This document shows, piece by piece, positions 1,031 to 62,859 of a stretch of DNA of 64,000 bases; position 1 is the first letter of the stretch; each line of letters begins with the position of its first letter. The stretch comes from Eutreptiella sp. 'Long Island Sound 2002'. Taxonomy: Eukaryota > Protista > Euglenida. Position numbers and translations under genes: made by a program. Under the pieces are notes generated by a model. The model did no database searches, was not told the origin of the DNA, and saw only the letters and a program-made list of their open reading frames with translations. The stretch lies in NCBI GenBank assembly GCA_964036045.1, contig OZ038378.1:137144001-137208000 (forward strand). The letters run 5' to 3'.

Positions 1031-2944
1031 GGGAATACCTTGCGGGCGTGCTTCACGTTGCGCCATGGTCGGGCGCACCCAACTACCAAGCGCAGTTGGA
1101 GGTGGGGGGGGGGTGCTCCTACGTCTTCTTCGTCGGCACCAAATGAGGGTTGTGAAAGATGGCACGGTGGATGAGGCGACGGCCATCAACTTCGCCATCA
1201 CCCGCACCCCCCCCCCCCCCGGCCGCCCAACAAACCTGTGGCACCTAGTGAACATGGCCCCAACCCGTGACATGAGGGTAAGGGGCCCGCCGAAGGCACC
1301 CCCTTCGCGTCTTCTAAGAGGGTCTAGGCAGCATTCCGTGACCGCAACCTTGGCCTCCCAAACCCCCCTTTCCACGGCCACATGACCCAGTCGACGCTAG
1401 GGGGATCCCAGCTCCGCAGCTGCCGAGTGAGGTGCAACACGTGTGGGGGGAGGGGAGGTGCGTCGAGGTAGGTGGTGTTGGGTTGGTGGTGGTAGTGCTT
1501 GAGGTCATGGGTCCAAAGGTTGAAAAGGGCCCCTTTCAGCGCATCCTTTGCCCCTTGGGGCGCAAGAAACTCATTGTGCCTGCTAGTGGCCACCATGGGC
1601 AGCATGCTCGCCCTTTGGAGCTCACATCCACCGGCGCCGCCAACGGCGCCACTAGCTGTGCGCGCCGGCCCGCCGCCGGGGTGGCCTTGCGAGGCGTCCT
1701 TCGCGACGGCGCTCCCGCGGTGGGCCAGCCAACTGAGGTGGCTACCAGGGCAAGGCCACGTGACGTACGCTTAGCTGGCCCTGGACTTCGAGGCCCACGC
1801 GGAGCGGGCACTCCCGGCCCCAAGCGACCACCGGCTGCGGGGGGTCACATTGCCACTACGCACCACAGGCCAAGTCCTGAAAATGGCCCTCGATGCGTTG
1901 CAGCCGCATCTGCAGGCAAGGGGACCTTCTGCAGGGCAAGGAGGTGTGGAGGGCCAAATCCCTCTTGCCGCTAGGGGGCTTCAGATGTGTGGGGAGGGCG
2001 GCGCGGCCATCGTTCGCGCGCCCGGACGCCCTCTTGTTCCAAATGCACCAGCTAGAGGCGCACTGCCGAGTGCTATGGACGCGGCGCCTGGCGCGGCCGG
2101 CAGCGGGGCAGCGGGATGTGTTCCTATTGGATTACCCGCCCCCGGCACGACCGCGGCTGTAGCCCCTGCAGCCCTTTCAGCGCTTGCCGCGCCGGCGGGT
2201 GCACCACGATCGGCAATGGGCAGGAGGCGGGGGCGCGGGCCGCATGGCACCGCCGCCCTGGGTGGCCCTGTGTGCGCGACACCAGGCCCTGCCCTGTGCC
2301 GCCTACGTGTAGCGGGGCGCCGAGCAATGCTGCTAGCAGGCTCACGAAGGGCACTGCATGGACGCGGCGCAAGCACACATGGTAGCGCAGGCGTTACGGG
2401 CGTGGTTGTAGCATGCGCAGCCGGCTGGGGACGGCTTCGTGGAAGCGTCCCACGCCGCGGGGCTCGCCAAATGCGCGCAAACTCCCCCGCTCGCGATCTC
2501 CATCACCAGCGCGCGTGACGCAACGAGCGCGCCCGATAGAGCACGAGTGCGCATGTCGCCCGAAGGAGCGCTTAGTCCCCCCCAATGCATCCACAAGGAG
2601 GGGGGGGGGGGCATAGGTTGAGCAGCTCCGGTATGACAAAAGAGCGGGGAGGGCTGAGGCAGCCCTTCCCGCCCTCCCTGCTCCCCCCAAGGTGAACCAC
2701 GAGGCAAGGGAGAGCACACGGGGAACGGTGGCAAGCGGCATGAGCGCCGGCAGGGCGCCCAGACAGACACACATGCGTCCCTCCCAAGGGCTGGCGGATA
2801 TTTTGGGGGACATCACCTGCCGGCTGACGGCGGGGCGGGCGAGATCATCGGCCACAGGGGAGGGAATTGACGCCCCCCCGCCCGCACGGAGTCGTGTGGG
2901 TTACGTGCTAGTGTGAGTCACAAGCAGACACGCAATCTCAAAAC

Positions 2945-2985
2945 AAAATCCTCATCAGTGGTAACAGAGGCGCCTTTCAGTCTGG
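2945..2985 (-). ncRNA. Candidate permuted hammerhead ribozyme at the 3' end of the Penelope-like element
   Basis: Minus strand reads ...AGACU-GAAA-GGCGCC-UC-UGUUACCA-CUGAUGA-GG. Both core blocks are present, with a palindromic stem III and a UC cleavage triplet. Stems I and II are weak. Confidence 0.4.
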
Positions 2986-3533
2986 GAACAGAAGCAGCGT
3001 GATGATGCAGGCTCCCAGGTACTGGGTTGCAGCCGTAAGCTTGGTCCTACAAAGAAACACCGTGTCCGTTGACACCGCGCTCCTTTCTCTATGATGGCCG
3101 CAGGGGCAGGCAGCAGGAACCGCTGACAAGTGTACAACCCTGTGTTAGTGCAGCGGGACTGCGGCCGCCAGGCAAAAAACAATATTGCACAGCGAACTAC
3201 AAAGGCGATGTAAAAAATGAAACTCAGACCCCCCTCCCCCGTCATTTGGCAGTCACGAACGATACTATAGCAACTGTAACAGATGGAGATCGTGGTGCCA
3301 TGTCGCACAATGCACAGAACAAGCTCCTGTGTGTGGGACATGCCAAGATGCGTATGCTGATCCGTCCCATACTGCTTCCCGGGACAACCACCGATGCAAT
3401 AGTGTAGATGCGGCCTTGGAGCTCGTCGGTAGACTGCGGTACTGAGTCACTGCCCACGCTATTGACGCTTCAACGCACCATGGCGACCAACTACAACATT
3501 TATGTATAGCGACTTTCATAGCCCGCAGGACTT

Positions 3534-4700
3534 TCAGCACTGGTGGTCACATATGCATGCAATGTGCATCCAGAGTGTGATGCTCAACAGAAAACATAAC
3601 CATGAAAAATGAAATGGCATACTATTGATCAAGGAACCTGTAAATATATTGGCTAAATGGCCAGCGGTAACGGCCCAGGGACTGTGCAGGCTGGGTCCCC
3701 ACTTCAGATCCCATTTGTCGTTTAAAGCAGACGGTGTGGAATAGCATAATACCTCGTGTTTTACACGTATAGTCAATCCCAAGATCCGTAGGGACGATGT
3801 CATGCAGGCTCCTGCGCACTGCATACCTTTGCTGAGTCAATCGCATAGCACTGGCAGACCCCAACATTCTGACAGCACTGTATAGACACGAGACATTTCC
3901 ATGGCCGCAAAAGGGCCTGCAGAAGCGACATTGACATTATCCCGAAATGGGGATAGTGACATGGTATTTCCTACCGGTGTCTTCCACAGAGGTACTGGCA
4001 CAGTTTGCACAAGGTCACCAAATTTTCTCATGCCAATGACGGTTTCTTTTAGGGCCCATATGCTGTGTAAATCCACGCCCTGCGCACTGAGGGATCCACC
4101 CATGGGAATCGCATCGGTACGTTGCCAGAGCTGACCAGCACACCAGACATAATTATCCTTAGTGAGGGAAAACTGCACTAGTTGTATGAGTTCATCATGC
4201 GACATATGCCAGAATGCAGACGAAGCTGCTTTGCCTGCTTTGTCTAGATGCTTACAGTCGCGATGCACGCTCCATACAATCTCAGATGCACCCCACCGAC
4301 GGCGCTGGTGTAAGTATTGGGATGCTGCACGCCATTCGTGTACTGTGGTGTCAGGACGAATGCGGTTAAGCTGCTCCTTGCAATAGGCTTCGCCGATGCA
4401 CGTTGCCACCCAGGCGCCGAGCTGTCATACCCAAGGGGCGATGTTTGTCACAGGCCGTACCAAAATGGCTGCAATGATTTCCTCTCACAGGCACCGTAAA
4501 AAGCACGTGAAGGCCCGCGCAGCGATCCGTAGAGTATGGCGACTCATGAAGGGACGGCTGACAGCGGCTATGGGCCGCCATAAAATACTAGGCAGCTGCA
4601 AACTTTTGGCTTTGCCAAGTAAGTACATGAGTGCCACACGGGGACGCACACCTGGTTTCCACGCAGACTGTGTAACTCGGTGCTTCAATCCCCGACCAAT
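3534..4700 (-). pseudogene. Penelope-like reverse transcriptase domain (disrupted)
   Basis: LMYLLGKAKSL...ILWRPIAA, GEAYCKEQLNRI (motif A, Asp apparently changed to Tyr), LWQRTDAIPMGGSLSAQGVDLHSIW (motif B), SPFRDNVNV (motif C position). Contains in-frame stops. Confidence 0.75.
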
Positions 4701-5411
4701 ATCCTATATCGGTGTGCTGACAGGATTGTACCCCTCTTGCACAGCAAATTGTACATGCTGGTCCCAAGCCCACTGTTTGCAGAATGCCCAGACGGCAGAG
4801 TTGTGCTTATCTACGATCCGTATATAAGCTACAGAACAAAGTTCACTTACTAAGGTGACAAATGAAAGAAGGCCAGAGCCTGATTCGGGGAACAGGACGC
4901 GGGGCAAAACGCGGTCCCAAAGGGGGTGTTCAGCGTGCAAACTCGCAGCCAATCGTTTCAAGTTATCAATGGCCATGCTGCGAGACTTCTGTCCATGCTG
5001 GGGGATGGGGACCCCTGAGCGTAAGATTGCTCCATGGTGGTGGAGTGTTACAGGCAATATAGCACAGTGTCCATCTATTTTGGTAATCGTGCCTGATGCG
5101 CTCCAAATATGTGAAAACTCTGTGGCGCAGCGACAGGGCGGCCGTGTGGTGGACCATGCTGCTGTGTTTTCCTGCTTTTCAACTAGTTTTCGCAAAGTAT
5201 GGGGCACGGTACGCACTACTCGTATCGATGCACGCACTGCCTGACGCTCCCAGCGTGGAATGGACAAACCTTGTACCATGCTACAAACAAATGTGTTAAT
5301 GCCTTGCTTCTGTGTACCAACGAGGTCTGGTACTTTGATCACAGGGGCTGGTAGGTGTGGTATGTGTAGTTCAGAACACAGCCAAGCAGCTTCAGTCTGT
5401 AGATAATGTAT

Positions 5412-6767
5412 CTATGCATAATCTAGCTCAATGCGGGCAGTGTGCAACCGTCTTAGGACGGTGCCCAATCTCTTGGTATGTTGTGGTGCTGGCGAGTGCT
5501 GGTCGTGTGGGCTTGGTATAGCAAGGGCACATGCATTGAGGGCCCACTTTTTCCATTTGAACCACCACGACCTCTCCAGGAAACATGCTGTCACACTGCA
5601 ATTTGTCCATTGTAAAGGTGCAATGGACCAATGGTGTATACCTGTGCGGCATAACATACTGTAGAAAGGACTGTCTTCAGCGCCGGATCTGGCTGTTGTC
5701 CAGTGTTTTCTGAGGCACTTCATTAGGGGATCTTCAGTTTTCCCGAAGTACAAGCAAAACAGGTGAGTATGGAATACTACATAAATAATATGACCATGTG
5801 CAGGCGCAGAGATAGACAATTCATGAAAATGCAAGCATGCGCGGATCGTCCAAAGCAGGGGATTTCGGTGGTACGGGAGGTGCTGCAGGCGGTATTCAAG
5901 CAATTCAGCCCAGCCGCCTAGATCACTATCAATGTCAGCTTTGTGAATGGCCTTGGTGTAAGTGTTGCACAGTAACTGTTGGTATTCCGAAGGTTTCCAC
6001 AGTGTGCCGTGTCCCTTATCCTGATGTTTAAAATGGGCATGGAGTCTCAGGCTCTGTAACAGCGAAGTCGCTTCAATGGCAGCGCATGAGGCATGAAGAT
6101 GCCAAACGGTACCTGCATAGCGTGCACATACTACAGGCTTGAAACTGACATCAGGGGTTTCGGGGTTCTCGGACCATATCCACTGCTGTGGGCCGTCGGG
6201 GGCAAAGCCTGCAACATCAGACGGGACATAATCAATAGCATTTGGGGAATCGCAGGAGGAAGTATCAGACCATTGGTTGTTGACAGCGATATGATGGGCG
6301 GAAACAAAGTGCCTAGGATGACTCCATACGCAAACACACCCGAGTTTGAGTATGACAAACCGACGGGCCCACATAGGCGGAACCCGGGGACCTTGTGGTG
6401 TGACGCGGTGGCTGATCCGCGGCCATAGAGGAGGCTTGGAGGATTGTGCAGACAAGAGGTGTTGTCGGACTGCTGACTGATCACCGAGCCAGTGTGTTCC
6501 CTCAGCTGGAGACTGAAACATGCACCATAACCGAAAGCCCGAGGAATCAAGACCGAATTCATGACGCAGGACGGAGTCATAAGAATGCGGAAGTGAAACC
6601 GGAATGTAATCATATTTTGCGGAAGGGGTGGGCACATGGGTGGATGCTTGTAACAATTGCTTAGCAAGGGACAAGTTTTGCACGGCTTGTTGAAGTCTAG
6701 CCTGCAGTACTTGTAGCTCTGTGTGAAAAGTGTCTAAGCTGCCATCAAGGGTCGCGAGGCGAAACAC
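5412..6767 (-). CDS. 451-aa ORF segment containing a GIY-YIG endonuclease motif
   Basis: GHIIYVVFHTHLFCLYFGKTEDPLMKCLRKH at ~5705-5795 fits the GIY-x-YIG...R/H pattern. Lies upstream of the RT on the same strand. Confidence 0.7.
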   Translation of the reverse strand: MFRLATLDGSLDTFHTELQVLQARLQQAVQNLSLAKQLLQASTHVPTPSAKYDYIPVSLPHSYDSVLRHEFGLDSSGFRLWCMFQSPAEGTHWLGDQSAVRQHLLSAQSSKPPLWPRISHRVTPQGPRVPPMWARRFVILKLGCVCVWSHPRHFVSAHHIAVNNQWSDTSSCDSPNAIDYVPSDVAGFAPDGPQQWIWSENPETPDVSFKPVVCARYAGTVWHLHASCAAIEATSLLQSLRLHAHFKHQDKGHGTLWKPSEYQQLLCNTYTKAIHKADIDSDLGGWAELLEYRLQHLPYHRNPLLWTIRACLHFHELSISAPAHGHIIYVVFHTHLFCLYFGKTEDPLMKCLRKHWTTARSGAEDSPFYSMLCRTGIHHWSIAPLQWTNCSVTACFLERSWWFKWKKWALNACALAIPSPHDQHSPAPQHTKRLGTVLRRLHTARIELDYA

Positions 6768-6840
6768 TTTGGGGGTATCCTACTGCCCTGTAAGACTGTT
6801 TTCAAACCCCGATTACCTGTGTTCCTGGACACCCGGTGTT

Positions 6841-7503
6841 TCAGTGACAGGAGGCTTTGAAGCATGACCCGGGACGCCTTTTTCGTGGTCGTGTATCAGG
6901 GGACACAGGCATAGCAGAACTCGATGCGCCATCCCGCTTGTTCTTTGAGGGCGAACTTTCTTGAGACATCAGGTCAACATCTGTGCCTACATTGTCCAAG
7001 GGGACAGAACGCGGCATTTCAAGGCGGGGGATGACCTTCGCTGTTAAGAGGGCTTTGTCGAAGGTTGTCAGCGCCGCATGGTGTTGCATAATATTGGTGT
7101 GCATTTTTTGTTGTGACAGAGTATGCTCCTGCAGGGCCACATCACGCTTGGTCATGCGTTCATCTTGCTTTGACAGTCGTTCCTCCGTGTCGGATTTCCA
7201 AGGGAGTATACGTTCCATTTGGCCTTCGAGAGTTGAAATGTCGGCTTCGAGTTCAGAGATTGAAGAAATTGCCTGCTCTGTGCGGTCGGCTCGCTTTTCT
7301 GACGCCTCTAGACGATCATTAGCATCCCAGGGTGCTGGGGGGGGGGGGGTCAACGGTGTCTGCCAGTTCTCGGGGGAGGGGCTACAGCAGCAATTGGGCA
7401 CTATGCCCTTCAAAGGGCCGGTGCGTGCGCCGGCTCCCTCGTCCGGGGGAGGGGGCGGGGGTTCGGCAGGGCCGGGAGCAGCAGTGCTGCCATGCGCGGG
7501 CAC
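6841..7503 (-). CDS. 5' ORF of the Penelope-like element: Pro-rich start plus coiled coil
   Basis: 220-aa ORF with heptad-like DRLEASEKRADRTEQAISSISELEADISTLEGQMERI, directly upstream of the GIY-YIG ORF. Confidence 0.5.
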   Translation of the reverse strand: MPAHGSTAAPGPAEPPPPPPDEGAGARTGPLKGIVPNCCCSPSPENWQTPLTPPPPAPWDANDRLEASEKRADRTEQAISSISELEADISTLEGQMERILPWKSDTEERLSKQDERMTKRDVALQEHTLSQQKMHTNIMQHHAALTTFDKALLTAKVIPRLEMPRSVPLDNVGTDVDLMSQESSPSKNKRDGASSSAMPVSPDTRPRKRRPGSCFKASCH

Positions 7504-14209: not shown

Positions 14210-17200
14210 ATGTAGTTGTACATGGGAGTAGAACCCCTCCGGAATATGTAGTATCGTGTAGACCTTTGTACATATCACAACAGCAGGTCTACTCCCAAGT
14301 ACAAGTGCTGCGGTGATATGTACAAGGGTATGGACCCCTATGCATATGACTGCAGGGGGTTTATTCCCCTGTACAAGTGCCGCGGTGATATGCACAAGGG
14401 TGTAGACCCTTGTACACATCACGGGAGGGGTCAATTCCGCTACAAAAGTGCTGTGGTGATATGTACAACGGGAAGGACGAATGTACATACTGGCGCAGGC
14501 AGTTTACTCCCTTGAAAAATGGCTATGGTGATACATACAAGGGCAAAGACCCTAGTACATATCACCGCAGCGGATGTACTCCCCTGTACATGTGCTGCAG
14601 TCATACGTACAAGGTTGCCTACCCCCGTACGTATCACCGCAAGGGGTTTATTCCCATGAGCAAGTGCTGCCGTGATATGTACAACCGTGTGGAGCATTGT
14701 ACATATCACCGCAAGGGGCCGCTATCTTTCAAAACCTGGGGGGGAGGGGGGGGGGGGCTGGGGGGTGTCGCATAAAAGGACCGGCCCCAGCCGCCCGCCC
14801 GTGGGTGAGATGTACAAGGGTCTAGACCTTTTTGATATCACCGCAAGAGGTTTGTTCCCATGCAACAATGTTGCAATGATACGTATAAGGGTGTAGAACC
14901 TGGTGCATATCACCGCGGGGCGTCTACTCCCCTGGAAAACAATTGCACTGAGATGTACAATGGTGCAGACCCTTGTACACATCACCAAAAGGGCTCTACT
15001 CACCCATGCAAGTGCTACAGCGATATGTAAAAGGGTATAGACCCTTGCACATATCACCGCTAGGGGTATATTCCCACGTGAAGTGCAGCGATGATATGTA
15101 TAAGCGTGTACACCCTTGTACATATCACTAAACCGGGTCTATTCCCACGGACAAGTGTTGCACTGGTATGTACAAGGCTGCGGACCATTGTACATGTATC
15201 ACCGCAAAGGGTCTATTTCCATGCACAAGTGCTGTGGTGACATGTACCATAGTGTGCACCCTTGGACATACCACCACAACGGGTCTATTCTCTGTACTAT
15301 TGCTCGGGTGATATATACAAGGGTGTAGGCGGTCTAGCACCATAGAAGGTCTATTTCCATGCGCAAGTGTTGTGGTGATATGCACAAGGCTGCACACCCT
15401 TGTAAATATCACCGCAAGGGGTCGATTCCCACGCACAATTGCCGGGGTAACATGCATAAGGCTGTGCACCCTTGTGCATACCAGCACTGGGGGTCTATTC
15501 CCTTACAAAATGGCCGCGGTGTTCTCTACAAGGTTGCACACTCTTGTACATACCAGCGCAAGGGTCCTATTCCCATGCACAAGTTTTGCGGAAAGATGTA
15601 CAAGGGTGCACACTCTTGTACATACCACCGCAAGGGGTCTTATGCCATGCAAAAGCGCTGCGGCGATATGCAAAAGGGTGTAGACCTTTGTAAAGGTCAC
15701 CGCAAAGGGGTCTATTGCCGTGCACAAGTGTTGCCGTGATATGTGCAAGGGTAGGCCCCCTTGTGCATATCACCGCATGGGGTCTCCTCCCCTGTACCAG
15801 TGCTGTAGTGATATGTACAAGCCTGCGGACCCATGTACATATCATCCCCCGGGGTCTCCTCACCTGTACCAGTGCTGTAGTGATATGTACAAACCTGCGG
15901 ACCCATGTACATATCATCCCCCGGGGTCTGCTCCCCTCTACCAGGGCTCCGCTGATATGTAGAACGGCGTACACCTTTGTACAGATCACGGCAAGCGGTC
16001 TATTGCCATGCAAAAGTGTTGCGGTGTTATGTGCAAGAAAAAGACTTTTGTACATATCACCGCAAGGGGTCTACTTTTCTATACCAGTGCTGAAGTGATA
16101 TGTACAAGGGTGTGCACCGTTCTACATATCACCGAACGGGGTGTATTCCCCTGCACAAGTGCCAACGCAATACATACATACAGGGCGTAGATAGTTGTAT
16201 GCATCGCCACACGGGGGCTATTGCCCTATAAAAGTGATGCCGTGAGATGTACAAGGACCGGGACCCTTGTCCATAGCATCTCACGGGGTCTTTTCCCATG
16301 TACATATGCTGTGGTGATATGTACCAGGGTGTAGGCCACGGTACATATCACCGCAGGGTTTCTATTCCTATTTACAAGTGTTGTGTTCATATCTAAAAGA
16401 GTGTATACCCTTGTGCATCTTGCTACACGTGGCGCGGTCCCTTGTACAAATGCTGTGTGAGATGTGCAAGGGTGTAGACCATTGTAGATATCACGGCACA
16501 GGGTTTACTCCCTCGTACAAGTCCTGCGGTGATATGTACAAGGGTGTAGATGTATGGGGCAGTAACCCCCGGCAGTGATATGCCAAAGGATCTACACCCT
16601 TGTACAAAGCGCCGTAGTACTTGTGCACGGGAATATACCCCCTCTGGTGATATGTAACAAGGTCTACACCCTTGTAGATATCAACACCACTGGTAAGGGG
16701 GAGTAGACCCCCTTCCGTGATGTACACAATCGTCTATAGACTTGTACATCTCAGAGCAACATTTGTGCAAGGGACTACCCCCCTTGCGGTGATATGTTCG
16801 ATGGTTGTTACCCTTGTAAGTATCACCGCGGCACTTGTATACCAGAATAGACGCCGTGGGGTGATATGTACAAGGGTCTACATCCTTGTAAATATCATTA
16901 CAGCACGTGTACAAGGGAGTAGACCCCCTATGGCGAGATGTACAAGGCTCCACACACTTGTACATGTCACCGCAACACTTGTACATAGGAAATAGACCCC
17001 CGGAGTGATATGTACCAGGGTCTTTACCCTTGAACATATCACGGCAACTCTTGTACACGAGAATAGACCCCCTTCGCTGTAATGTACAAGGGTCTACATA
17101 CTTGTACATATCACGGCACCGCTTGTACAACGGAGTAAACCCCCTACGGCAATATGTACAATCGTCTTTCACCTTGTACATATCACCTGAGCATATGTGC

Positions 17201-39838: not shown

Positions 39839-40245
39839 CCCCTGCCGCCTGGGGGTTCCCCACCGCTTCAAAGCGGGGGGCAGAATCAGAAGTGGCCCAC
39901 AAGTGGGCAAGATGGCTACATAACCCCTGCCGCCTGGGGGGTCCCCACCGCTTCAGAGCCGGGGGGCAGAATCAGAGGTGGCCCACAAGTGGGCAAGGTG
40001 GCTACATAACCCCTTCCGCCTGGGGGGTCACCACCGCTTTAGAGCGGGGGGCAGAATCAGAAGTGGCCCACAAGTGGGCAAGGTGGCTACATTACCCCTG
40101 CCGCCTGGGGGGTCCCACCGCTTCAGAGCGGGGGGCAGAATCACAGGTGGCCCACAAGTGGGCAAGGTGGCTGCATAACCCCTGCCGCCTGGGGGGTCCC
40201 CACCGCTTCAGAGCGGGGGGCAGAATCACAGGTGGCCCACAAATA
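39839..40245. repeat. ~4.8 tandem copies of an ~85-bp unit
   Basis: CCCCTGCCGCCTGGGGG...CCGCTTCAGAGCGGGGGGCAGAATCA.A.GTGGCCCACAAGTGGGCAAGGTGGCTACATAA starting at ~39839, 39924, 40010, 40095 and 40179. Confidence 0.95.
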
Positions 40246-53300: not shown

Positions 53301-53499
53301 TGTGCAAACCGTCCGGCCACTGGGCGGAATTAATCTCTCATTGATAAGAGGACGCAACTCCCAAATAACAACAGTGCCTCCACCGTGCAGACTATCCGAC
53401 CACTCCGCGCATCTGGTGTTTCATTGATACTCGAGCCCACATCCCACATAGCAAGAGTGCCTGTACTGTGCGAACCATGCGGCCACTCGTCGCGATGGG

Positions 53500-54700
53500 T
53501 GTTTCATAGATAAGAGAACCCAAATCCACCATGCGGCCACTCGGTTACTCTTCTCTCAACCAAATGCTTTGTAGTGTGATATGTCTAAGCATCACACACT
53601 ATACGTCGATAACTTCGCGTACCAAGTCCGGGCCCCGCACAATCGAGAGAGGGCCTTCTTTGCCATTGTGTACCGCCATGATCCTGAGAAACATACCCTG
53701 TGCTCTTCGTTGTCCCATGAGAAATTTGGGCGACCCATGCGTCATCCGAGACTAACATTCAGCTCCTGCAGCCGGAAGCGGTACCACATTACTATGCTAA
53801 AGGCACCATGCTAGGGGCAGAGGAAAAACCACAAGCCCGGCGGAGTTGCATTGAAAGTGCGGCATGGTTTGGTGCTATCCCGTACTCAGATGCAACTTCT
53901 GCACCTACTATGCATAAGCCTAAAATGTTGTGCCGAAGACCTTTTGAATGAAGAAAAAGCTGCACTTCCCTCGTTTAACAGAGAATTCACCAATTCACGG
54001 CTTCTTGTGGATGTTTTTTTTCCGTGATCTGGATGGCAGCAAAAACATGCAACCATGCATAGAGGCAATAACCCTGTCTGTTGTTGTTCAAGTTCGCGGA
54101 TGGTGTTGCACCGCGGGGGCACGGAAATGTGAATTTGCAAGTAGCCATCATAGATTGTTCAAGCAGTCTCATCCCCGCCATAGTACCAACATATCTGATA
54201 GCACCATGCTATTTACGTGGCAGGAAACGTCAAAAAAGGAGTTCCATGCGTGACGCATGTAGGGACACATTGAGGAGCTAAACATAGTGCAAACAATGAA
54301 AGTTCCAATCACACAAACCACCGCGGTCATGACCCCGGACTTCATGGCTGGGGATCACCATTTTTTCTGGTCCTAGACCCGCACCTATTGTTGTTCACTA
54401 TATACTTGGTCACCCGGGGACAACATTCAGAAGCTTTTTTGGGTACACGGCTTGGTGCCGTACAGAACATAGGGAACATGCAGCTTGTGCTGCCCATCAT
54501 ACACAATCTAAAGTGGATTGTGTCCCTTTTTTTTTGAATATGTGGGCGAGCCAAGCACCATTCCCAGCAAGTTGCATGGCTGTGCTTTCAATGGTGGCAA
54601 AGCGGTATGCCGCATCTAACAATGCAAAACAGGCACGTGCAAAGGCCCGGCAACGATTTGCATCAGGGATTCGGGATCTCTCTCCAATCAAACACCAAAT
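53500..54700 (-). pseudogene. Possible second non-LTR RT remnant
   Basis: RSRIPDANRCRAFARA (RP..I.N...R..A) and IRELEQQQTGLLPL (GIRQG.PLSP) positions are loosely preserved. Many stops. Confidence 0.3.
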
Positions 54701-55205
54701 GCGGCGAACGGCTGGATGGTGTGCACAATATAGGCACTATTGCTATGTGGGATAGGGGTTCTCTTATCAATGACACACCTAATGAGCCGAACGGCCGGAT
54801 GGTGTGCACAGTACACTCACTATCGCTATGTGGGATTTGGGCTCTATTGTCAATGAAATACCAATTGTGCCGAGTGGCTAGACAGTCGGTACAGTAGAGG
54901 CAGTATTGCTATCTGGCACTTCGGTTCTCTTATAAGGGATCCCAATATATCAGTTTAGGAGCGTTGCATGAAGGCAAAGCGCACCCTCACCCTGACCATC
55001 CTTCAGGGGTGTTGGGCTTGGAAATTGGGAAGCTATGTTGGCCGTGTAGGCCCGAAGGCAGACATGTAGTGTCAATAGACACTCAGTCCGCCCCAGCGGA
55101 GGTCACGCCTCGGCCCGACCCTTCGCATAAGCGACAAGTGCCAAGATTGGAAACGGAGAAACGTGTCGGCTTGAAGGCAAACCTGTTCTACAAATGTAAA
55201 CTCAC

Positions 55206-55377: not shown

Positions 55378-56397
55378 CTGAAAAGTGAACCAGAGAGTGC
55401 AGGGCTGCGAAAAGTAAGCAGTGGGTGGGCACAACACCATCGCAACCTTACCAACAGAAACGAGCCAGGACCTCGGAAGGCGGGAGTGCAATAGCACGTA
55501 CTTGGGAATGGGCCTGCCTTCAACGACCCTCACAAAAGGGTTGTTGGAAGTGGCCACATGAGCAGCCCCCTTACAAGTCCAACGTGCCTGTACGAAAACA
55601 AGTGCCTCCCCCTCCCCCTTGCATAAATGTGCAAAAACTGGAAAGGTTGTGGCTGCCGCCAGGGGCACATACCCCTTGTCTTTCAGAGCAATTGCCTCCG
55701 AAAGGCGGCTAACCGCGTCCCTGTGCCAACAGCCGTTGCGCTTAGGCGCTGCAAATGCCAGAAGCGTTGTGGAGGAACCTTGAACGAAACACCAAGCTGA
55801 GTCAAGACCCTATCCCGGGCTTGGACTCGCGGGTCCCAAAAAAAAAACAAAGGGCAGTTCCTGCCACATACGTGCCGTTATATGTGAATGCGGCATCCGG
55901 GTTTGCAACCCGATGGGCCGTCCAGCCTTTTGGCTGCACAGCATCACAAAAGTTGAAGAGGCAGGATGCGCAATCATATCAACAACAAACACATCTACCT
56001 CCAAAGGGGGTTGTTTGCGGTTGTGTCCACCCCGCATGCTTAGACGGCCCAAAGTGCCCACCCCCCCCCTAAATGGACCCCCGACAAAAATGTCACCAAA
56101 TGACGGTCATCAAAAACGCGTTCTATAGGGGTGAAACTTCAGCAACAAGCAGCGCACTTAGGTTTCCCCTCGTTTTTGACTACCCCCATATACGTTTTTG
56201 GCACTTTGCGCACAACACCAACTTGAGGCTGGGCCCTGTGAAATATGGGGAAAATAGTCGAAATTCTGAGGAGGAACCCCACGGGACGCATGTGTGTCTA
56301 TGCACGCTGCAATATCACTACACCACCGGAGGCACTACTCATCGACGCGTACCATGTTACTCAAATTTTGTTTTGCAGACAGTGAAATACTGAGGTT

Positions 56398-58906
56398 TGT
56401 CTGGAAACAGACAGATCTTACCAAAACCTGCAGCACGGGGAGTAATGACAAAAAGTTGTCTGGTTCCGGACACAAGACGAGTAACCTGGTGAAAAGTTAC
56501 TGTATTCCACAAAAGGAAATGTGGTCCGCAACAAAATGTCATAAAAGAGTGACAAAGGCTTGTCAGTCGCGTGTTGTTGAAGGGAAAATCGTCGAAATTG
56601 ACCACTGGGACCCAGAGAGCAGACTGGCACGCCCACAGGGTGCCACAGTGATTACATGCTATGAATAGATATTGTGGTCACTGAGCAGGCTTACAACAAC
56701 ATTGTGCAACCAATAGCAACTGCAACAATGCAGTTTTAGTTCTTCTTCGAGCCATTGAATCGGTCCTTCCATGCCTAAAACCGAATCTTGGCCCTCTTGT
56801 AAGCTGACGACTGCGAATCGGATCCCGCAGCTGCACGCTCATCAGGAGGGGATGCCTTGGCTTTTTTGTTGCCTTTGCCTTTGTTCTAGGATGAGGAGGC
56901 TTTGTTCTCGTCTCCTTTGCGTATGCGACCACCTTTTTTGCCAGGGCCTCGTGCCTGCTTCGGTGTACAATACACAGCATTGTCTGGGGTGGTGCCCACG
57001 TCTTCCACTTTATCTTCAGACTTCTGCTCTCCCTCTGCCTTCTCAGGCACACAGCTTCTGTCCACAAGGCAACCCTCCGCAAAATTTTCAAACACTGCAT
57101 TCCACAGAGTTGGGCTCAGCCCATCAGCGATGCGTAAATTGCTGCATACAAGGGCACCAATGTCTGCAATAGACGCCTGCTCCGTGGACAAACCCAACAC
57201 CACACTGATGGGTACCGGCATGCACACTGCCGAACTGCAAGCCAGCTATACAGAACCACTGATAACCAAGAACCACAAGGTAGTTGCTTCTGAGGGTACT
57301 GTATCTGCCAGCTGTTGCATGACAAACCCAACAACCTCCGTACACAGCTGGTTCACCACGAGACCACGAGAAAAGGCAAAGTAGCTAGGCACTTGTAGAA
57401 GGGAACACTGAGTCTGACACCCCTACTGGTGTAGCTGGACTGGCCGATGTGGTTTGGTTCTAGACACTTTCCCACAATTCACCCTTTTCAGGGTGCATTC
57501 TGCCTCGTAAGTGTCTGGTTCCAGACAAACTTTAGGATTTAACGGTGCCCACAACGTAACTCTGGTAGCAAGCAGCAGGTAGCAAGAGCTGACAGTAATA
57601 CCTTCTTGGGTAGCGGATTTTTGGAAATTACCCAAAGCTCAGTGAATCCCATCGAGTACTGCCGTGTGAGAGATCCCAGAATAAAGCAAGCCACGCGAAC
57701 TGTTGTCCAACCCTCATTGTCGTGCAACTTTCGGAGACCATCCAGCACTCCCAAGACGTCACAAGCCTCGCCAAAAATGAGAACAAGCGTCCCAGACACC
57801 AAATTGCGACTGACAACGGAATGGATGCCTTCCATATGTCATTTTGAAACTTCAACGATGATCAGGCAATACGGCATGTTGGCCACCGTAGAGTGCAGCG
57901 GAGTACCAGGTGCCATCCCAGTGATATGCATGACCCCATCCAGGGACTTGCTGTCAGTCACCTCTGCCTCTGGGGCCTCACACCCAATGTTGACGGTGAT
58001 GAAGCTCACATCAGCGGCAATCTTCATCTCAGGGTACACAAGAGGACGTTTAAGGGCAACACGGAGGGGGGCATACGTGGGGTCATTCCAGATTTGCAGC
58101 AGTTACGACATACTTCTAGGGGGGCCAGCAGTTTTCCTCAGACCACTTCCAAGTGTACGTCTTGAATGTGACATGGCTCTTTGACAACACACACTGCTCA
58201 AAACGGGCCCGTTGTGCAAGCGTTTTGCGACTGGGGTCAACCAAGTCGTTGTCCGGGTGGCAGAGATGATGTTCCCACAGACGTGCAGCCTTCAGTTGCT
58301 TTGCCTTCTTTTTAATCATTGGCAGTGACACATTGCTGAAGCACATGTACTGCGTAACCTCCTCAAGGTTTGGTGGGATGAGGCCTTCCAGGCGCTTCCA
58401 AAAGTGCAGCTTTGCTGACTGTCCACGCCTCTCGAGTCCATGGACAACAACCACAGCCTTATCCCCCATCAATTGCACCCAGGCGGCAATCGGAAACCGG
58501 GCTTTTCTGACAGTGTCCTGCACAGCGAACATTGCACATGCGTCCCTAGCCAGGAAAGTTGCCCAATGCAACAACGAAGGCTATCACAGCTGTCTTGAAC
58601 CAGACACCTGATGTATTTCTACCATCACCGGACTTCACTTATGTTCTATTGCGTCTAGTACCAGACATTTGGCGCAATTCGATCATTCGCACACCAAACC
58701 GTGTCCCGTTTGCGTCTGGAACCAGACGCAACTTTTTTTAGCCTCGTCAAAGTGTGTGCCTGGACCTCCATGTCTGGAACCACACAACAACTCCCCGATG
58801 CGGCCAGTCAAAGCACAAATCCTCCTGCTGTGTTGGTACCAGGCAACACCTAATTACTGACACCCATGGAACGGAGATCAGGTCCTCTTTTGTCTCGAAC
58901 CAGACA
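56398..58906. repeat. Ten copies of a 16-bp palindrome TGTCTGGWWCCAGACA in three clusters with a ~60-bp period
   Basis: Copies at 56398, 56457; 57451, 57512; and 58591, 58652, 58713, 58771, 58831, 58891. Intervening 42-45-bp segments are not recognisably alike. Confidence 0.85.
56900..58060 (-). pseudogene. Putative beta-class DNA N6-adenine/N4-cytosine methyltransferase remnant
   Basis: Motif order fits PF01555: TVANMPY (DPPY-like motif IV), RNLVSGTLVLIF...GWTTVRV...TELWVISK, VVNQLCTEVV (QKP region), TLWFLVISGSV*LAC (degenerate motif I, VLDPFxGSGST..A). Confidence 0.4.
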
Positions 58907-59118
58907 ACAGTCTGCTAAACAGCCTTGTATGTCGAAAATTGGCTACCACCACACAGTTCGCGTAATGGCACCCTGTGCAGGCCCAGGCATACTAGTGTCC
59001 CGTCGTTCAGTGTATAGCCACCCTTCACGTATAGCACTCCCAGGTGTTCTCGTATGGATTTCTCCTCCGGTTCATCGCGGTCCAGCTCAACACGCAGGAG
59101 TTCCATCCGTGTAGACAA
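58116..59118 (-). pseudogene. ParB/Srx-like N-terminal segment, interrupted by the palindrome array
   Basis: KSIREHLGVLYVKGGYTLNDGTLVCLGLHRVPLREL resembles the ParB-like V..L...I...GY....G.I.V...DGxHR..A..L pattern. A protein-like ORF continues at 58116-58574 after the array. Confidence 0.35.
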
Positions 59119-59599
59119 CTTTGGCGAGGTCGTGGCAGACTGCAGAGCCCGCGATACGACGGGTGGTCACAGCAGTTAACCCCCCCCCCCCCGACAAACG
59201 AAGGGGCCAGTCACACAGGACAATGGGCAGGTGATGATGGACGTCACAGGCGTGGGATATTTCCCCGGTGTGGGACGGTAGCATGCAGTGTCCAAGTGCA
59301 CTGTCACAGTCGATATACCTGTGACATGCCAGGGATTGACTCCCGTATGTGCAGAGTGACATCCATGCGAACCACTTGAGCAAGAAATTGCATCGACCAT
59401 GTTGACGGTTCCAAATGGGCATTCATATACTCCCTTGCGATTCGTCGATAGGCCGCGGCGATATGCTACCCCGATAAGATGCAACACTGCCCCACTGCGT
59501 CCTGATGCGACATACCCCCCAGCTATCTATCGTCACACCACACTATGATTCGGATTTTTGATGCACTTGGTGCATTCCCGCGTAGCTTTATCATCTTGT

Positions 59600-60950
59600 C
59601 CTGGACAAGATCTTCATCCAGCACTCTGATTTGGCCATGCTCCCCTTTTTTGTCCCATTGCAGTCTGCAGATGGGCAGCAGGACCCCCTAGCCTTCAGTA
59701 TGGTCACCAATTTTCAGTTGACCATCTTTTCCCTTCGGTGTGTCACCACATTTCCGCTTGGACTTGGATGGGGCATCGTCGACGACACTGAATTGGGATG
59801 CGAGACCAACTGAGAGGTCTGCAGATGGGTTCACTGCTACCTTGCGTAAGGTCAGACGTGTTGGAACCAACGGGGCGCAAGACGCAAAATTGGTGCATCC
59901 CGCACCCGCTAAGCCTGTGCATCTCGGCCTGCATGATCGCGGAGGAGTCTGCCTGGAACAATGGTTCTCAACAACCATAAGACTTCATTTGTGGGCAAAC
60001 GCGCTGCACTTGTCAATGTGGAGAGGGATCTAGTCAACAGCCTGTGGTACAGGGCCTCACTGCCGTTGTCCACTGGTTGCGCTAGGAATTTCAAGTCCTC
60101 AGGGACAGCGGTAATTGCTGCCTTCTTTCCACTTTTCCACGGAACATGGACCATGCGGTTCGTTAATGGCCTACACGAACCTGCGTAGTTGTGACGACAT
60201 AATCGCAACCAGTCCACTGCGAATCTGCCCCCGCGTCTGCTTTTCCCCTCGCTTTGGTGGTGCCATGCTGAAAAATAGGTCCAATGTGTGGTCAAAAGTC
60301 TTCATCTGGGGGTATGCGCGGCACCTAGATCCGAGACGACTCAACATGGCCTCCAAGGGGTCCTCAGCATAACAACAGCCCGGGACGGCGTCATTCCAGG
60401 GTAACCACAAGAGAAGGGCAACACATAGGGTGCGTACGTTGGGGACGTTGCAGGCAGTGTCCATTGCCAAGGCTACAATCAATACCAAACTCCACCCCAA
60501 TACTTTGCGGGCTGTACGGCTTGTCCCTGCTAGTCCATCCCAGTTGCAGGCACGAACTAAGTTTCCAAGGAGGCACGCAGCCGGAATGTAGAAGTGCAGG
60601 AGGTTCTTCAGTCCACTCAACCATACGAGTGGTAGCTTGTGTGCTGCCTCTAGAAATTGCAGAAATGTAGTCTCCTGTGTACGATGCGGTCCTCAACGTT
60701 GTGTGTGGCTAACAGTAGGGCACAAAATTGTTTCTCAATGTGCAACAGCTTCGGGTGGCACATGATCTCGTCACCTACCGCGGGCACTTGCTGCCCAAGG
60801 TACCCCAATATGGGGAAGAACTTACGGTGGATCATGGTAGACGCATACCTATCAGGGTGCCGGCAGCCGTAGAGCATTGGGAGAGTGGCAGAGTGCTCGG
60901 CCAACTTAAAGGGGTTGTATGTCCGACTGTACATGAACTTGGCGAGTCGG
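59600..60950 (-). pseudogene. Putative DDE transposase remnant (family uncertain)
   Basis: Long protein-like segments [18 protein letters not shown]...HPKLLHIEKQFCALLLA and LWLPWNDAVPGCCYAEDPLEAMLSRLG. The latter resembles the terminal-Glu region of Transib/Chapaev/P-like transposases. Confidence 0.35.
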
Positions 60951-60952
60951 TA

Positions 60953-61252
<300 letters not shown>

Positions 61253-61479: not shown

Positions 61480-62760
61480 TAGGGGCCAGGTGCGTGCCTG
61501 CGACATGCGTGCGACATGCCTACACAGTGTCCTGCGAAGTGTCCTGCGTAGTGTAGAGAGGGGAAAGGGCAGGGCAGGGAGGGAGGGGCCGGGTGCGTGC
61601 CTGCGACATGCGTGCGACTTGCCTACAAAGTGTCCTGCCTAGTGTCCTGCGAAGTGTAGAGAGGGAAAAGGGCAGGGGAGGGAGGGGGAGGTAGGGCGGG
61701 AGTAGAATGCCGAAGGCTGCGGGCCGGTGCGGACGGAACCAGGGCACCTGGGAGCGGCAAGGTGAAGGGGGAGTGGGAGGGGTGCCTCGCGTATTGCTCC
61801 GCGAAGTGTATGCCGGGAGGGTAAAGGGAGGACGGGGACAGAGACACCGAGGGCCACGGACCAAGGGACCTGGGAAGGGGGGCACGTGAGGACGAGGGAG
61901 GGCGAGCAGACAGGGGGCAGGACAGGGCCAGGGGGCCAGGGCAGAGAGAGGGGGCAAAGAGGGAGTGCTGCCACGCGAATTGCTCCGCATCGTGCTCGCG
62001 CTGGCCGGATGGCAGAGGGGCAGAGAAGGCAGGGCAGGGACGAGGGCGTGCCACGGCGGCATGAAGGAGCGAGCGTGAGGCAGAAGCACAAAGGTGCCCC
62101 ACAACCGAGCGAGCCGCCCGCAGTGCGCGGGGGCACTGGACAAGGCGGAGCGCCGCGGCGCGCTGCCGCAAAGCGGTCCACCCACAGAGGTGCAGTGTCC
62201 TGCGTAGCGTCATACAACGAGGGCCAGGTGCGTGCCTGCGACATGCGTGCGACTTGCCTACACAGTGTCCTGCGAAGTGTCCAGCAAGGGGTAGAGGGGT
62301 GACAGGGCAGGGGAGGGAGGGGGAGGCAGGGCGGGCATAGAGAGACAAAAGCCGCAGGAGGGTGCAGTGCGACATGCGTGCCACAAGCCTAGAGACCAGG
62401 GCGCCAGGGGGAGGCAAGGTGAAGAGGGAATGGGAGAGGTGCCACGAATTGCTCCGCGATGTGTATGCAGGGAGGGTACAGCGAGGACGGGGACAAGGAG
62501 ACAGAGGGCCAAGGACCCAGGGGCCTGGGAAAGGGGGCAAGGGAGGACGAGGGAGAACGAACACACGAGGGGCAGGGCTAGGCCAGGGAACGGGAGTAGA
62601 GGGGGGCAGCAAGGAGGGAGGGTTGCCTCGCGAAATGCTTCGCACCGTGCTAGCCAGAGCGGAGAGAGGGAGCGACGAGGGAGACAGGGGCATGCTCAGC
62701 GCTAGGCGAGCACAGAGGGCGAGGGAGGGAGCAGCGGGGGCAGGGTAGGGGATAGTTGCC
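61480..62760. repeat. GC-rich purine-skewed tandem repeat (~740-bp unit with shorter subrepeats)
   Basis: GGGCCAGGTGCGTGCCTGCGACATGCGTGCGAC...CAGTGTCCTGCGAAGTGT at 61481, ~61588 and 62221. 61740-62000 resembles 62400-62680. Confidence 0.85.
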
Positions 62761-62859
62761 ATGCGTCGTGCCGTGCGCCATGCGCGTCCAGAAACCGACT
62801 CTAACCTCAATCATGCGTCATGTCACGTCAGTCAAGCCTAGGGCAGGAGGCAGGAAGCG

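What the first reader, a model, noticed from the sequence alone, without database searches (positions are those of the whole stretch)
58591..58906. CRISPR-like / parS-like array: six 16-bp palindromes with unique 42-45-bp spacers inside a ParB-like ORF
Seen: TGTCTGG(AA/TA)CCAGACA recurs at 58591, 58652, 58713, 58771, 58831 (one base shorter) and 58891. The spacers are 45, 45, 42, 44 and 45 bp and are not alike, so only the palindrome is conserved. The third copy extends to a 22-bp palindrome (TTGCGTCTGGAACCAGACGCAA). The array sits between two minus-strand protein-like ORF segments (58915-59118 and 58116-58574). Established: bacterial parS sites are 16-bp palindromes of TGT...ACA form bound by ParB, and CRISPR arrays have constant repeats with unique spacers. 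Inference: selection is acting on the palindrome and its spacing, e.g. as protein-binding sites for the neighbouring ParB-like/MTase product, a structured spliced insert (euglenid non-canonical introns pair CAG with CTG), or a spacer-acquiring array.
Basis: partly seen in the sequence, partly recalled or inferred. Interest (0 to 1): 0.85.

Follow-up and report, generated by a model that had tools for sequence, protein, structure and literature searches.

The report
Phased palindrome sites in transposon intron
The six short palindromes are real, but they are one of five clusters of a family-specific docking-type site in the non-coding parts of a worn-out jumping gene that also encodes a ParB-like protein; they are not a CRISPR-like array, and similar pairings were recently described in other algae.

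Summary
The motif is real and non-random: 8 hits with at most 2 mismatches in the window against 0.13 expected. No copy is perfect, and spacing is 58-62 bp.

The array lies in a canonical phase-0 GT-AG intron (58518-58971, minus strand). The gene is the accessory gene of a truncated, frameshifted copy (56039-60960) of a ~7.2-kb cut-and-paste transposon with CTTAG inverted ends and 5-bp target duplications.

Eleven paralogous copies from the same assembly show five clusters of the same 16-mer, all ~60 bp phased and all in non-coding DNA: both subterminal regions, the intergenic spacer and two introns.

- Spacers are colinear between copies, so there is no spacer acquisition.
- Arrays change by duplication of 120-bp double units, by deletion between cores, and by one inversion inside the intron that separates two subfamilies.
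- Within a copy, cores stay 83-88% alike while spacers are at shuffled level.
- A lineage 30% diverged keeps the cores and the spacing.
- Between dead copies, cores decay like their flanks.

Exon 1 of intact paralogs folds as a ParB/Srx domain. The methyltransferase claim is unsupported.

Most likely the 16-mers are binding sites for an element-encoded dimeric protein. Binding is not shown.

This scan reported the same family earlier on other DNA (s1-199728, s1-210120, s1-216453).

The parts
56039..60960 (-). Truncated, frameshifted copy of a ~7.2-kb DNA transposon. It covers element positions 1468-7185 of 7190 and lacks 2550-3484.
   Evidence: Colinear at 82-90% identity with full copies L001-L003. 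Full copies have CTTAG... inverted ends and 5-bp target duplications.
56039..56060 (+). The only surviving terminal inverted repeat (CTTAGACGGCCCAAAGTGCCCA).
   Evidence: single match in the window, 0 expected.
56398..56472 (.). Cluster E: a pair of cores (56398-56413, 56457-56472), 59 bp apart, in the 3' non-coding subterminal region.
   Evidence: The same pair is present in L001-L004 and L012.
57393..57601 (-). Intron 3 of the accessory gene. It holds cluster D (cores 57451-57466 and 57512-57527, 61 bp apart). The acceptor is mutated (AA) in this copy.
   Evidence: GT donor and AG acceptor conserved in phase 0 across copies. Cores.
57602..58517 (-). Exon 3 remnant (305 codons in intact paralogs). 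The fold is unknown and the window copy is frameshifted.
   Evidence: Mismatches at codon positions 1/2/3 are 52/42/105 between lineages, p = 3e-8. P0114 is an intact ORF.
58518..58971 (-). Intron 2 (454 nt, GT...AG, phase 0/0). It holds the whole array.
   Evidence: Five of five differences in the 10 codons just after the acceptor are synonymous in L008 against L003.
58535..58949 (.). Segment that is inverted between the two subfamilies. The window is of the 'TT' orientation.
   Evidence: Reverse-strand alignments to L002 and L003 (72% over 327 bp, E = 9e-41) inside forward-strand flanks. Orientation follows the tree.
58591..58906 (.). Cluster C, the finding: six cores at 58591, 58652, 58713, 58771, 58829 (decayed) and 58891.
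58972..59139 (-). Exon 2 (56 codons).
59140..59318 (-). Intron 1. It has a homopolymer tract and no cores.
59341..59715 (-). Remnant of the ParB/Srx-like domain coding region (exon 1). It is frameshifted here.
   Evidence: Mapped from the intact paralog L005:5953-6534. AF2 pLDDT is above 90 for residues 70-192. All Foldseek top hits are ParB, Noc, Srx, KorB or PadC. The profile hits sulfiredoxin.
59888..59890 (.). Junction of a ~935-bp deletion. It removed the end of the transposase gene and the whole intergenic cluster B (6-7 cores in full copies).
59891..60960 (-). Remnant of the transposase gene (about its last two thirds).
   Evidence: The nearest Atlas clusters carry DUF6589. There is no Pfam hit.
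60955..61250 (.). (AT)148 microsatellite at the point where the copy is truncated.

Best explanation
Shown. The array is cluster C of five clusters of one 16-bp dyad site: two 7-bp arms, TGTCTGG / CCAGACA, around a 2-bp A/T centre. The clusters populate the non-coding DNA of a ~7.2-kb cut-and-paste transposon family: both subterminal regions, the spacer between the transposase gene and the accessory gene, and introns 2 and 3 of the accessory gene. Neighbouring sites are almost always 58-62 bp apart. The window holds an old, truncated, frameshifted copy whose sites are decaying neutrally.

Inferred. In active elements the 16-mers are cis-acting binding sites for a dimer of an element-encoded protein. 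The best candidate is the accessory protein, whose first exon has the ParB/Srx fold. Several phased sites per cluster would let the protein coat or bridge the element's own non-coding DNA. That would be self-recognition, used to regulate or modify the element, in the way F-plasmid SopB assembles on sopC or VANC proteins act on VANDAL repeats. The arrays arise and change by tandem duplication, unequal recombination between cores and rearrangement, not by acquiring spacers.
For: Site statistics:
- 8 hits against 0.13 expected in the window.
- 115 hits in 8 copies. 57 of 78 neighbour distances are 58-62 bp, and most of the rest are near 2x, 3x or 4x that.
- Information content drops sharply outside the 16 bp.

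Placement:
- The same five clusters sit at the same places in L001-L004 and L012.
- All clusters lie outside the coding blocks, which were defined by conserved GT/AG sites and third-position excess.

Constraint at family level:
- Within one copy, cores are 83-88% alike pairwise. Spacers are at shuffled level (0.54-0.56) apart from about 5% of pairs that are recent duplicates.
- Lineages L008 and L009, at about 70% nucleotide identity, keep the same 16-mer and the 60/61-bp spacing.
- In L009 cluster A, three of four cores are kept with 3/48 changes, against 38% change outside the cores. Fisher p = 0.004 with the lost core included.
- The block was inverted inside its intron in one subfamily and still keeps its cores. 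Apart from its 2-bp centre, the core is the only part of the block that reads the same on both strands.

Candidate binder:
- The ParB/Srx fold is seen in the profile search (sulfiredoxin, E = 0.01), in the AF2 model (pLDDT 83) and in Foldseek, where the top 50 hits are all ParB, Noc, Srx, KorB, PadC and other ParB/Srx-type chains, best E = 1.6e-4.

Precedent:
- Tandem inverted-repeat arrays next to ParB-like accessory genes in red-algal Plavaka elements (10.1101/2025.02.11.637652).
- A ParB-like plus methyltransferase accessory gene in Ectocarpus Sola1 (PMC12477816).
- sopC is 12 x 43 bp, each unit with a 16-bp inverted repeat bound by SopB (PMC3177203).
- VANC targets form tandem repeats in non-coding transposon DNA (PMC5735166).
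Against: - No binding data of any kind.
- Only the ParB N-terminal (Srx-like) fold was found. In bacterial ParB the sequence-specific contacts come from an adjacent helix-turn-helix, which was not detected here.
- The exon-3 model failed (pLDDT 36).
- The transposase is an equally available binder, and two clusters are subterminal, where transposase sites usually lie.
- Between genomic copies, cores diverge as fast as spacers and flanks (13% against 11% and 14%). The window's own array is therefore under no constraint.
- The family-level test rests on one diverged locus (p = 0.004).
- Spacing could be a legacy of duplication rather than selected.
- No RNA evidence that the element is expressed.
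Confidence: 0.55

Rival explanations
1. The 16-mers are transposase-binding sites. These would be subterminal and internal 'enhancer' sites that assemble the transposition complex, as with the reiterated TnpA motifs of En/Spm or the subterminal motifs of Ac. The ParB-like protein would play no part in reading them.
For: Clusters A and E are subterminal, about 270-500 bp from the left end and 380-440 bp from the right end, and have opposite centre orientation. The deletion derivative L012 has lost the ParB exons but keeps clusters A, C, D and E. Dyad symmetry fits any dimeric binder.
Against: Most cores are internal, in the intergenic spacer and two introns of the accessory gene. That is unusual for transposase sites. 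Published parallels link inverted-repeat arrays to the ParB-like gene rather than to one transposase superfamily.
Confidence: 0.2
2. A functionless internal minisatellite. A ~60/120-bp unit with a palindromic core spread inside the element by tandem and dispersed duplication. The likeness of the cores would reflect recency or recombination between cores, not selection.
For: The AA subfamily shows a plain 120-bp higher-order repeat. Cluster B is a ~240-bp duplication. Deletion breakpoints lie at cores. Dead copies decay neutrally.
Against: Spacers within a copy are at shuffled level while cores stay 83-88% alike. Cores and spacing persist in lineages about 30% diverged. Conservation stops exactly at the 16-bp edges. 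Five separate non-coding places all carry the site.
Confidence: 0.15
3. An RNA-level role. Palindromes in the pre-mRNA would pair with each other to fold introns 2 and 3 and aid splicing, or would feed small-RNA production.
For: Clusters C and D are intronic. Any two cores are complementary to each other. An inversion leaves the cores themselves essentially unchanged.
Against: Three of the five clusters lie outside the two genes' coding blocks and introns, though it is not shown that they go untranscribed. The introns have ordinary GT-AG ends 25-75 nt from the nearest core. Folding is barely better than shuffles (z = -2.4 and -1.7). Intron 1 has no cores. No Rfam match.
Confidence: 0.07
4. A CRISPR-like array that acquires spacers.
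For: Only the look of it: a constant short repeat with dissimilar spacers of constant length in this one copy.
Against: The same spacers occur in the same order in paralogous copies. Other copies carry duplicated spacers. The repeat is 16 bp. The host is eukaryotic, and no Pfam family matched any ORF of the element that was scanned, in the window or in the fetched copies. No phage match. The array words are multi-copy in the genome.
Confidence: 0.01

Closest known systems
Plavaka transposons of red algae: PAG3 (ParB-like N-domain) with adjacent tandem arrays of inverted repeats (Petroll et al. 2025, 10.1101/2025.02.11.637652)
   Same: A DNA transposon carries an accessory gene with a ParB-like N-terminal domain and arrays of inverted repeats in its own non-coding DNA. 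The authors propose that the protein binds its own element. As here, that rests on weak homology and has not been tested.
   Different: Different host lineage and element: ~7.2 kb against 17-19 kb, CTTAG ends with a 5-bp duplication, and a transposase whose nearest Atlas clusters carry DUF6589. Here the sites sit in five dispersed clusters with strict ~60-bp phasing, two of them inside introns of the accessory gene. No 2OG-oxygenase or other enzymatic domain could be shown.
ParB-like + DNA methyltransferase accessory protein of Ectocarpus Sola1-1 and related algal transposons (PMC12477816)
   Same: A long accessory protein (~770-800 aa here, 1104 aa there) begins with a ParB-like domain and is carried by a cut-and-paste element.
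   Different: The methyltransferase domain could not be confirmed here: no Pfam, NCBIfam or PDB match, and the model failed. No site arrays are described for the Ectocarpus element in the passage read.
F-plasmid sopC / SopB, and ParB-parS centromeres in general (PMC3177203)
   Same: An array of direct repeats, each carrying a 16-bp inverted-repeat site read by a ParB-family dimer. The protein is encoded next to its sites.
   Different: The period is ~60 bp against 43 bp. The spacers have diverged to shuffled level, whereas F's repeats are, from memory, near-identical. There are five clusters instead of one. No ParA partner and no helix-turn-helix were found. The host is a eukaryote and the replicon is a transposon. 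The core shares only its TGT...ACA ends with chromosomal parS (consensus recalled from memory).
VANDAL transposons: VANC anti-silencing proteins and their tandem-repeat target motifs (PMC5735166)
   Same: An element-encoded accessory protein is matched with family-specific short motifs that accumulate as tandem repeats in the element's non-coding regions. This is the best functional model for 'works like'.
   Different: The protein family is unrelated, and the motifs there are not 16-bp palindromes. An effect on silencing is shown there and is unknown here.
Reiterated subterminal motifs bound by TnpA in En/Spm (CACTA) elements (from general knowledge)
   Same: Many copies of a short motif, partly as inverted dimers, lie within a few hundred bp of both ends.
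   Different: Most sites here are internal (intergenic and intronic), and the spacing is regular.
CRISPR arrays
   Same: A constant repeat with spacers of constant length.
   Different: The repeat is too short. There are no cas genes. Spacers are inherited colinearly or duplicated. The context is a eukaryotic transposon intron.

Membership tests
CRISPR array | Direct repeats of about 23-55 bp, near-identical along the array | tested here: not met
   The conserved unit is 16 bp and information drops to about 0.1-0.25 bit outside it. The window's copies carry 1-2 mismatches each.
CRISPR array | Spacers acquired independently, so arrays differ in spacer content and spacers match foreign DNA | tested here: not met
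   The same spacers occur in the same order in WIN, L001, L006 and L007. L002-L004 carry duplicated spacers. No phage match.
CRISPR array | Linked cas genes | tested here: not met
   No Pfam family matched any ORF of the element that was scanned, in the window or in the fetched copies. The genes have GT-AG introns.
ParB-parS / SopB-sopC type partition site | Palindromic site of about 16 bp, often reiterated | tested here: met
   A 7+2+7 dyad, 115 copies in 8 element copies, phased.
ParB-parS / SopB-sopC type partition site | A linked ParB protein with an N-terminal ParB/Srx domain | tested here: met
   AF2 plus Foldseek and the profile hit to sulfiredoxin. This holds for intact paralogs. The window's own copy is frameshifted.
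ParB-parS / SopB-sopC type partition site | A helix-turn-helix DNA-binding domain next to the N-domain | tested here: inconclusive
   The confident model ends at residue 192 of exon 1. Exon 3 is predicted helical at its start but with pLDDT 36.
ParB-parS / SopB-sopC type partition site | A ParA ATPase partner and a role in segregating a replicon | tested here: not met
   The element holds only a transposase-like gene and the accessory gene, and no P-loop family was found on any ORF. It is an integrated transposon with target-site duplications.
ParB-parS / SopB-sopC type partition site | Specific binding of the protein to the site | not testable with these tools
   Needs EMSA, DAP-seq or ChIP.
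Algal transposons with a ParB-like accessory gene and inverted-repeat arrays | A cut-and-paste element with terminal inverted repeats and target-site duplication | tested here: met
   CTTAGACGGCCCAAGTTGCCCA... at both ends and 5-bp duplications (ATAAT, AACAA, ACAAT) in L001-L003.
Algal transposons with a ParB-like accessory gene and inverted-repeat arrays | An accessory gene with a ParB-like N-domain, separate from the transposase | tested here: met
   Coding status confirmed by third-position excess.
Algal transposons with a ParB-like accessory gene and inverted-repeat arrays | Arrays of inverted repeats in the element, next to the accessory gene | tested here: met
   Clusters B (upstream), C and D (introns) and E (downstream) of the accessory gene.
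Algal transposons with a ParB-like accessory gene and inverted-repeat arrays | A DNA- or chromatin-modifying domain (methyltransferase or 2OG oxygenase) fused to the ParB-like domain | tested here: inconclusive
   No Pfam, NCBIfam or PDB sequence match. The AF2 model is unusable. Only a DPTY tetrapeptide after a hydrophobic strand recalls motif IV. A supposed motif I turned out to lie in intron 3.
DUF6589-type (Academ/KDZ-like) transposase | A match to the family profile | tested here: inconclusive
   No Pfam hit even at E = 5. By language-model features, 47 of 60 nearest Atlas clusters carry PF20231, score 0.94.
Minisatellite / tandem repeat | Head-to-tail units that are alike over their whole length | tested here: not met
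   Not met in the window: TRF finds none and spacers are at shuffled level. Met in part in the AA subfamily, which has a 120-bp double unit.
Non-canonical (euglenid-type) intron | No GT-AG ends; intron ends brought together by base pairing | tested here: not met
   Conserved GT donor and AG acceptor in phase 0, both outside the repeat block. Splicing itself was not observed because no RNA runs were available.

The most novel reading that the evidence does not exclude
A eukaryotic cut-and-paste transposon runs a ParB/parS-like self-recognition module. Its ParB-fold accessory protein would load as dimers on the phased 16-bp dyads in every non-coding segment of the element, spread or bridge between clusters, and so mark 'self' DNA for protection from silencing, for modification or for transposition control. 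This would be a bacterial centromere-type module reused by a protist transposon, with sites tolerated even inside the protein's own introns and in either orientation.
Probability: 0.3. Interest if true: 0.65.

Novelty: new member of a known kind. Interest (0 to 1): 0.35.

Why it matters
The pairing of a ParB-like accessory protein with arrays of inverted repeats has been proposed, but never tested, for transposons of red, brown and green algae. This family shows the same pairing in another protist, with a very clean anatomy:

- one 16-bp dyad;
- about 60-bp phasing;
- five non-coding clusters;
- a natural inversion and natural deletion derivatives.

That gives a compact, well-defined substrate for a direct binding test, and for asking whether such proteins protect or regulate their own element.

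For genome annotation, the lesson is that CRISPR-looking repeat-and-spacer patterns in eukaryotic DNA can be transposon-internal site arrays.

The copy in this window is itself a dead relic with no likely present function.

Tried and rejected
- **RNA evidence.** The laid contigs show no splice joints over the array. Splicing and small RNAs therefore remain untested.
- **Family libraries.** Pfam and NCBIfam scans of every exon and ORF, in the window and in intact paralogs, gave nothing.
- **Methyltransferase test.** The profile search against PDB gave only chance-level hits. AF2 on exon 3 with 16 paralogs gave pLDDT 36. The Atlas had no usable hit.
- **A supposed motif I.** I first read 'FPYTGAS' as methyltransferase motif I. 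It lies in intron 3 in another frame and was dropped.
- **Non-canonical intron.** I first thought intron 2 had to be non-canonical, because no in-frame GT-AG exists at the inversion breakpoints. A conserved GT donor lies 25 nt upstream of the breakpoint and solves it.
- **An invertible switch.** Rejected. Orientation follows the copy tree, so one inversion suffices (support 87/90).
- **Palindrome derived from the terminal repeat.** No similarity between the two.
- **Structured RNA.** Weak z-scores and no Rfam family.
- **The two-core pattern elsewhere.** No hit in JGI metagenomes or IMG/VR, and no phage match.
- **Distant ParB-like homologs.** They sit on metagenome contigs of 1.3-1.6 kb, too short to look for site arrays. 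Co-variation of protein and site across families was therefore not tested here.
Full report
**Observation**

Reading 57900-59400 and a mismatch-tolerant search confirm copies of TGTCTGGWWCCAGACA at 58591, 58652, 58713, 58771 and 58891. A decayed copy lies at 58829-58845. Start-to-start distances are 58-62 bp.

- None matches the consensus exactly. Each has 1-2 mismatches.
- Further copies lie at 56398/56457 (59 bp apart) and 57451/57512 (61 bp apart).
- With up to 2 mismatches the window has 8 hits against 0.13 expected, and 0 of 100 shuffles reach that.
- TRF sees no tandem repeat.
- The window's five spacers are no more alike than shuffled sequence.

**What surrounds it**

The minus-strand ORF next to the array has 29 paralogs of 70-90% identity on long contigs of one ENA assembly. 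A second exon finds about 70 ORF clusters. I fetched ten loci that hold copies or relatives of the element (L001-L009 and L012).

Window 56039-60960 is colinear with them at 82-90% identity. Full copies are about 7,190 bp. They end in inverted CTTAGACGGCCCAAGTTGCCCA... repeats and are flanked by 5-bp target duplications: ATAAT, AACAA and ACAAT.

The window copy is damaged in several ways:
- It keeps only one end, at 56039.
- It lacks the first 1,467 bp, where an (AT)148 tract now stands.
- It has a ~935-bp internal deletion at 59888/59890.
- It is frameshifted.

It is a dead copy. K-mer depths of the laid contigs are tens of times higher on the element than on the unique flank. Together with the roughly 70 ORF clusters found with exon 3, this fits a multi-copy family.

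**Genes**

Gene 1 is a ~720-aa transposase-like ORF. It has no Pfam hit. By language-model features, 47 of its 60 nearest Atlas clusters carry DUF6589.

Gene 2 has four exons. Three introns have GT donors and AG acceptors that are conserved across copies and all in phase 0.
- The ten codons just after the intron-2 acceptor differ between L003 and the diverged L008 at five places, all synonymous.
- Mismatches between lineages fall 52/42/105 on codon positions 1/2/3 in exon 3 (p = 3e-8).
- In exon 1 they fall 33/31/60 (p = 0.002).

In window coordinates (minus strand):

| Part | Coordinates |
|---|---|
| intron 1 | 59140-59318 |
| exon 2 | 58972-59139 |
| intron 2 | 58518-58971 |
| exon 3 | 57602-58517 |
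| intron 3 | 57393-57601 |

The array of the finding lies wholly inside intron 2. The pair at 57451/57512 lies inside intron 3.

**The ParB claim**

Exon 1 of an intact paralog finds 84 representatives in the 1.8-billion-protein library, many at about 30% identity.
- None has a Pfam family.
- A profile of 45 of them hits sulfiredoxin in the PDB (E = 0.01).
- AF2 gives pLDDT above 90 for residues 70-192.
- The Foldseek top 50 are all ParB, Noc, sulfiredoxin, KorB, PadC and other ParB/Srx-type chains, with best E = 1.6e-4.

The ParB/Srx N-domain fold is therefore supported. In the window its remnant lies at about 59341-59715, which is 370-1,120 bp from the array and not around it.

**The methyltransferase claim**

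This is not supported. There was no Pfam, NCBIfam or PDB match, no Atlas hit and an unusable model. Only a DPTY tetrapeptide recalls motif IV.

**The site family**

In full copies the same 16-mer forms five clusters:

| Cluster | Place | Cores |
|---|---|---|
| A | upstream of gene 1, 270-500 bp from the left end | 3-4 |
| B | between the gene 1 stop and the gene 2 start | 6-7 |
| C | intron 2 | 4-6 in most copies; only about two remain in L005 |
| D | intron 3 | 2 |
| E | downstream of gene 2, 380-440 bp from the right end | 2 |

All clusters are non-coding, and only intron 1 lacks cores. Over the seven full or nearly full fetched copies and the window copy, 57 of 78 neighbour distances are 58-62 bp, and most of the rest are near two, three or four times that. 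Aligned on the core, information content falls from 1.2-1.9 bits to about 0.1-0.25 bit exactly at the edges of the 16-mer.

**Not spacer acquisition**

WIN, L001, L006 and L007 carry the same five spacers in the same order. In L002-L004 the array is a plain tandem repeat of a 120-bp double unit, made of two spacer types that share a GTCAAAG centre. Unit number there varies from 4 to 6. Cluster B is a ~240-bp duplication. L012 is a deletion derivative whose breakpoints are a core of cluster B and a core of cluster C. The arrays therefore evolve by duplication and by recombination between cores.

**An inversion**

A 415-bp block (58535-58949 in the window) holds all the cores of intron 2. In L002-L005 and L012 it lies in the opposite orientation from WIN, L001, L006, L007 and L008. 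The evidence is reverse-strand alignments (E = 9e-41) inside forward-strand flanks, and the AA or TT centre of the cores. Both splice sites lie outside the block. On a tree of the 2.5 kb downstream, orientation separates the two groups (support 87/90). One inversion is enough, and this is not a switch.

**Constraint**

Between dead copies, cores diverge like everything else: 13% against 11% for spacers and 14% for flanks. The window's array itself is under no selection.

At the level of the family the picture differs:
- Within one copy, cores are 83-88% alike. Spacers are at shuffled level, apart from about 5% of pairs that are recent duplicates.
- Lineages at about 70% nucleotide identity (L008, L009) keep the same 16-mer at the same places with 60/61-bp spacing.
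- In L009 cluster A, three of four cores show 3/48 changes against 38% outside the cores. Fisher p = 0.004 with the lost core included.

**Mechanism**

These steps are shown: a family-specific, dyad-symmetric, phased non-coding site, and an element-encoded ParB/Srx-fold protein.

These steps are inferred: the 16-mer is bound by a dimer of an element protein. The accessory protein is the best candidate. The transposase is the main rival, since clusters A and E are subterminal. The reiterated phased sites would let that protein assemble over the element's own DNA.

Published parallels:
- sopC/SopB: 12 x 43 bp, each unit with a 16-bp inverted repeat (PMC3177203).
- VANC proteins and their tandem-repeat targets in VANDAL non-coding DNA (PMC5735166).
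- The closest parallel: ParB-like accessory genes with adjacent inverted-repeat arrays in red-algal Plavaka elements, and a ParB-like plus methyltransferase gene in Ectocarpus Sola1.

An RNA-level role is weakly supported. The introns are ordinary GT-AG, folding gives z = -2.4 and -1.7, there is no Rfam match, and three clusters lie outside the two genes' coding blocks and introns.

**Limits**

No RNA data were available. There are no binding data, and no helix-turn-helix was found. Co-variation between protein and site across families was not tested, because the distant homologs sit on very short contigs. The two-core pattern is absent from JGI metagenomes and IMG/VR.

**Verdict**

This is a real pattern with an ordinary origin: a relic copy of a transposon family whose non-coding DNA carries phased palindromic sites.
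- The CRISPR-like reading is refuted.
- The parS-like reading is plausible, matches a recently published proposal and is untested.
- The same family and idea were already reported by this scan at other places in the genome (s1-199728, s1-210120, s1-216453).

Noticed in passing
window 58535-58949, against L002:6616-7055 and L003:6737-7055: The repeat-bearing block of intron 2 is inverted between two subfamilies of the element, while both splice sites stay outside it. Orientation follows the copy tree, so this was one old inversion. The AA-orientation copies also lack about 28 bp next to one breakpoint.
   Followed up: yes
L012:7293 (joins element positions ~2787 and 4433): A young deletion derivative lost 1.65 kb, including the ParB-like exons. 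Its breakpoints are a core of cluster B and a core of cluster C, which indicates recombination between the 16-mers.
   Followed up: partly
window 60955-61250: A perfect (AT)148 microsatellite stands exactly where the transposon copy is truncated. It seems to have grown from an ATATAT stretch in the transposase coding sequence. The DNA beyond it (61251 onward) is unrelated and GC-rich.
   Followed up: no
window 61480-62810: GC-rich repetitive DNA with a 103-bp tandem duplication and long proline-rich pseudo-ORFs on the minus strand. Its nature was not examined.
   Followed up: no
window 59170-59185, and next to the terminal repeat at 56061-56072: Homopolymer C/G runs of variable length (8-20 nt between copies) lie in intron 1 and just inside the terminal inverted repeat of every copy.
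   Followed up: no
window 14260-17186: A large 72-bp-period satellite built of nested palindromes (TRF, 32 and 8.5 copies). It is unrelated in sequence to the 16-mer studied here and was already noted by the scan (s1-206756).
   Followed up: no
window 39839-40242 and 53359-54916: Further tandem repeats of 85 bp (93% matches) and 83 bp. They are not connected with the element.
   Followed up: no
window 56250-60770 (table 3): Contigs of the DNA runs laid at 95% or more carry recurrent single-base differences at very high depth. This is the signature of many near-identical paralogous copies collapsing on this one, not of editing.
   Followed up: no
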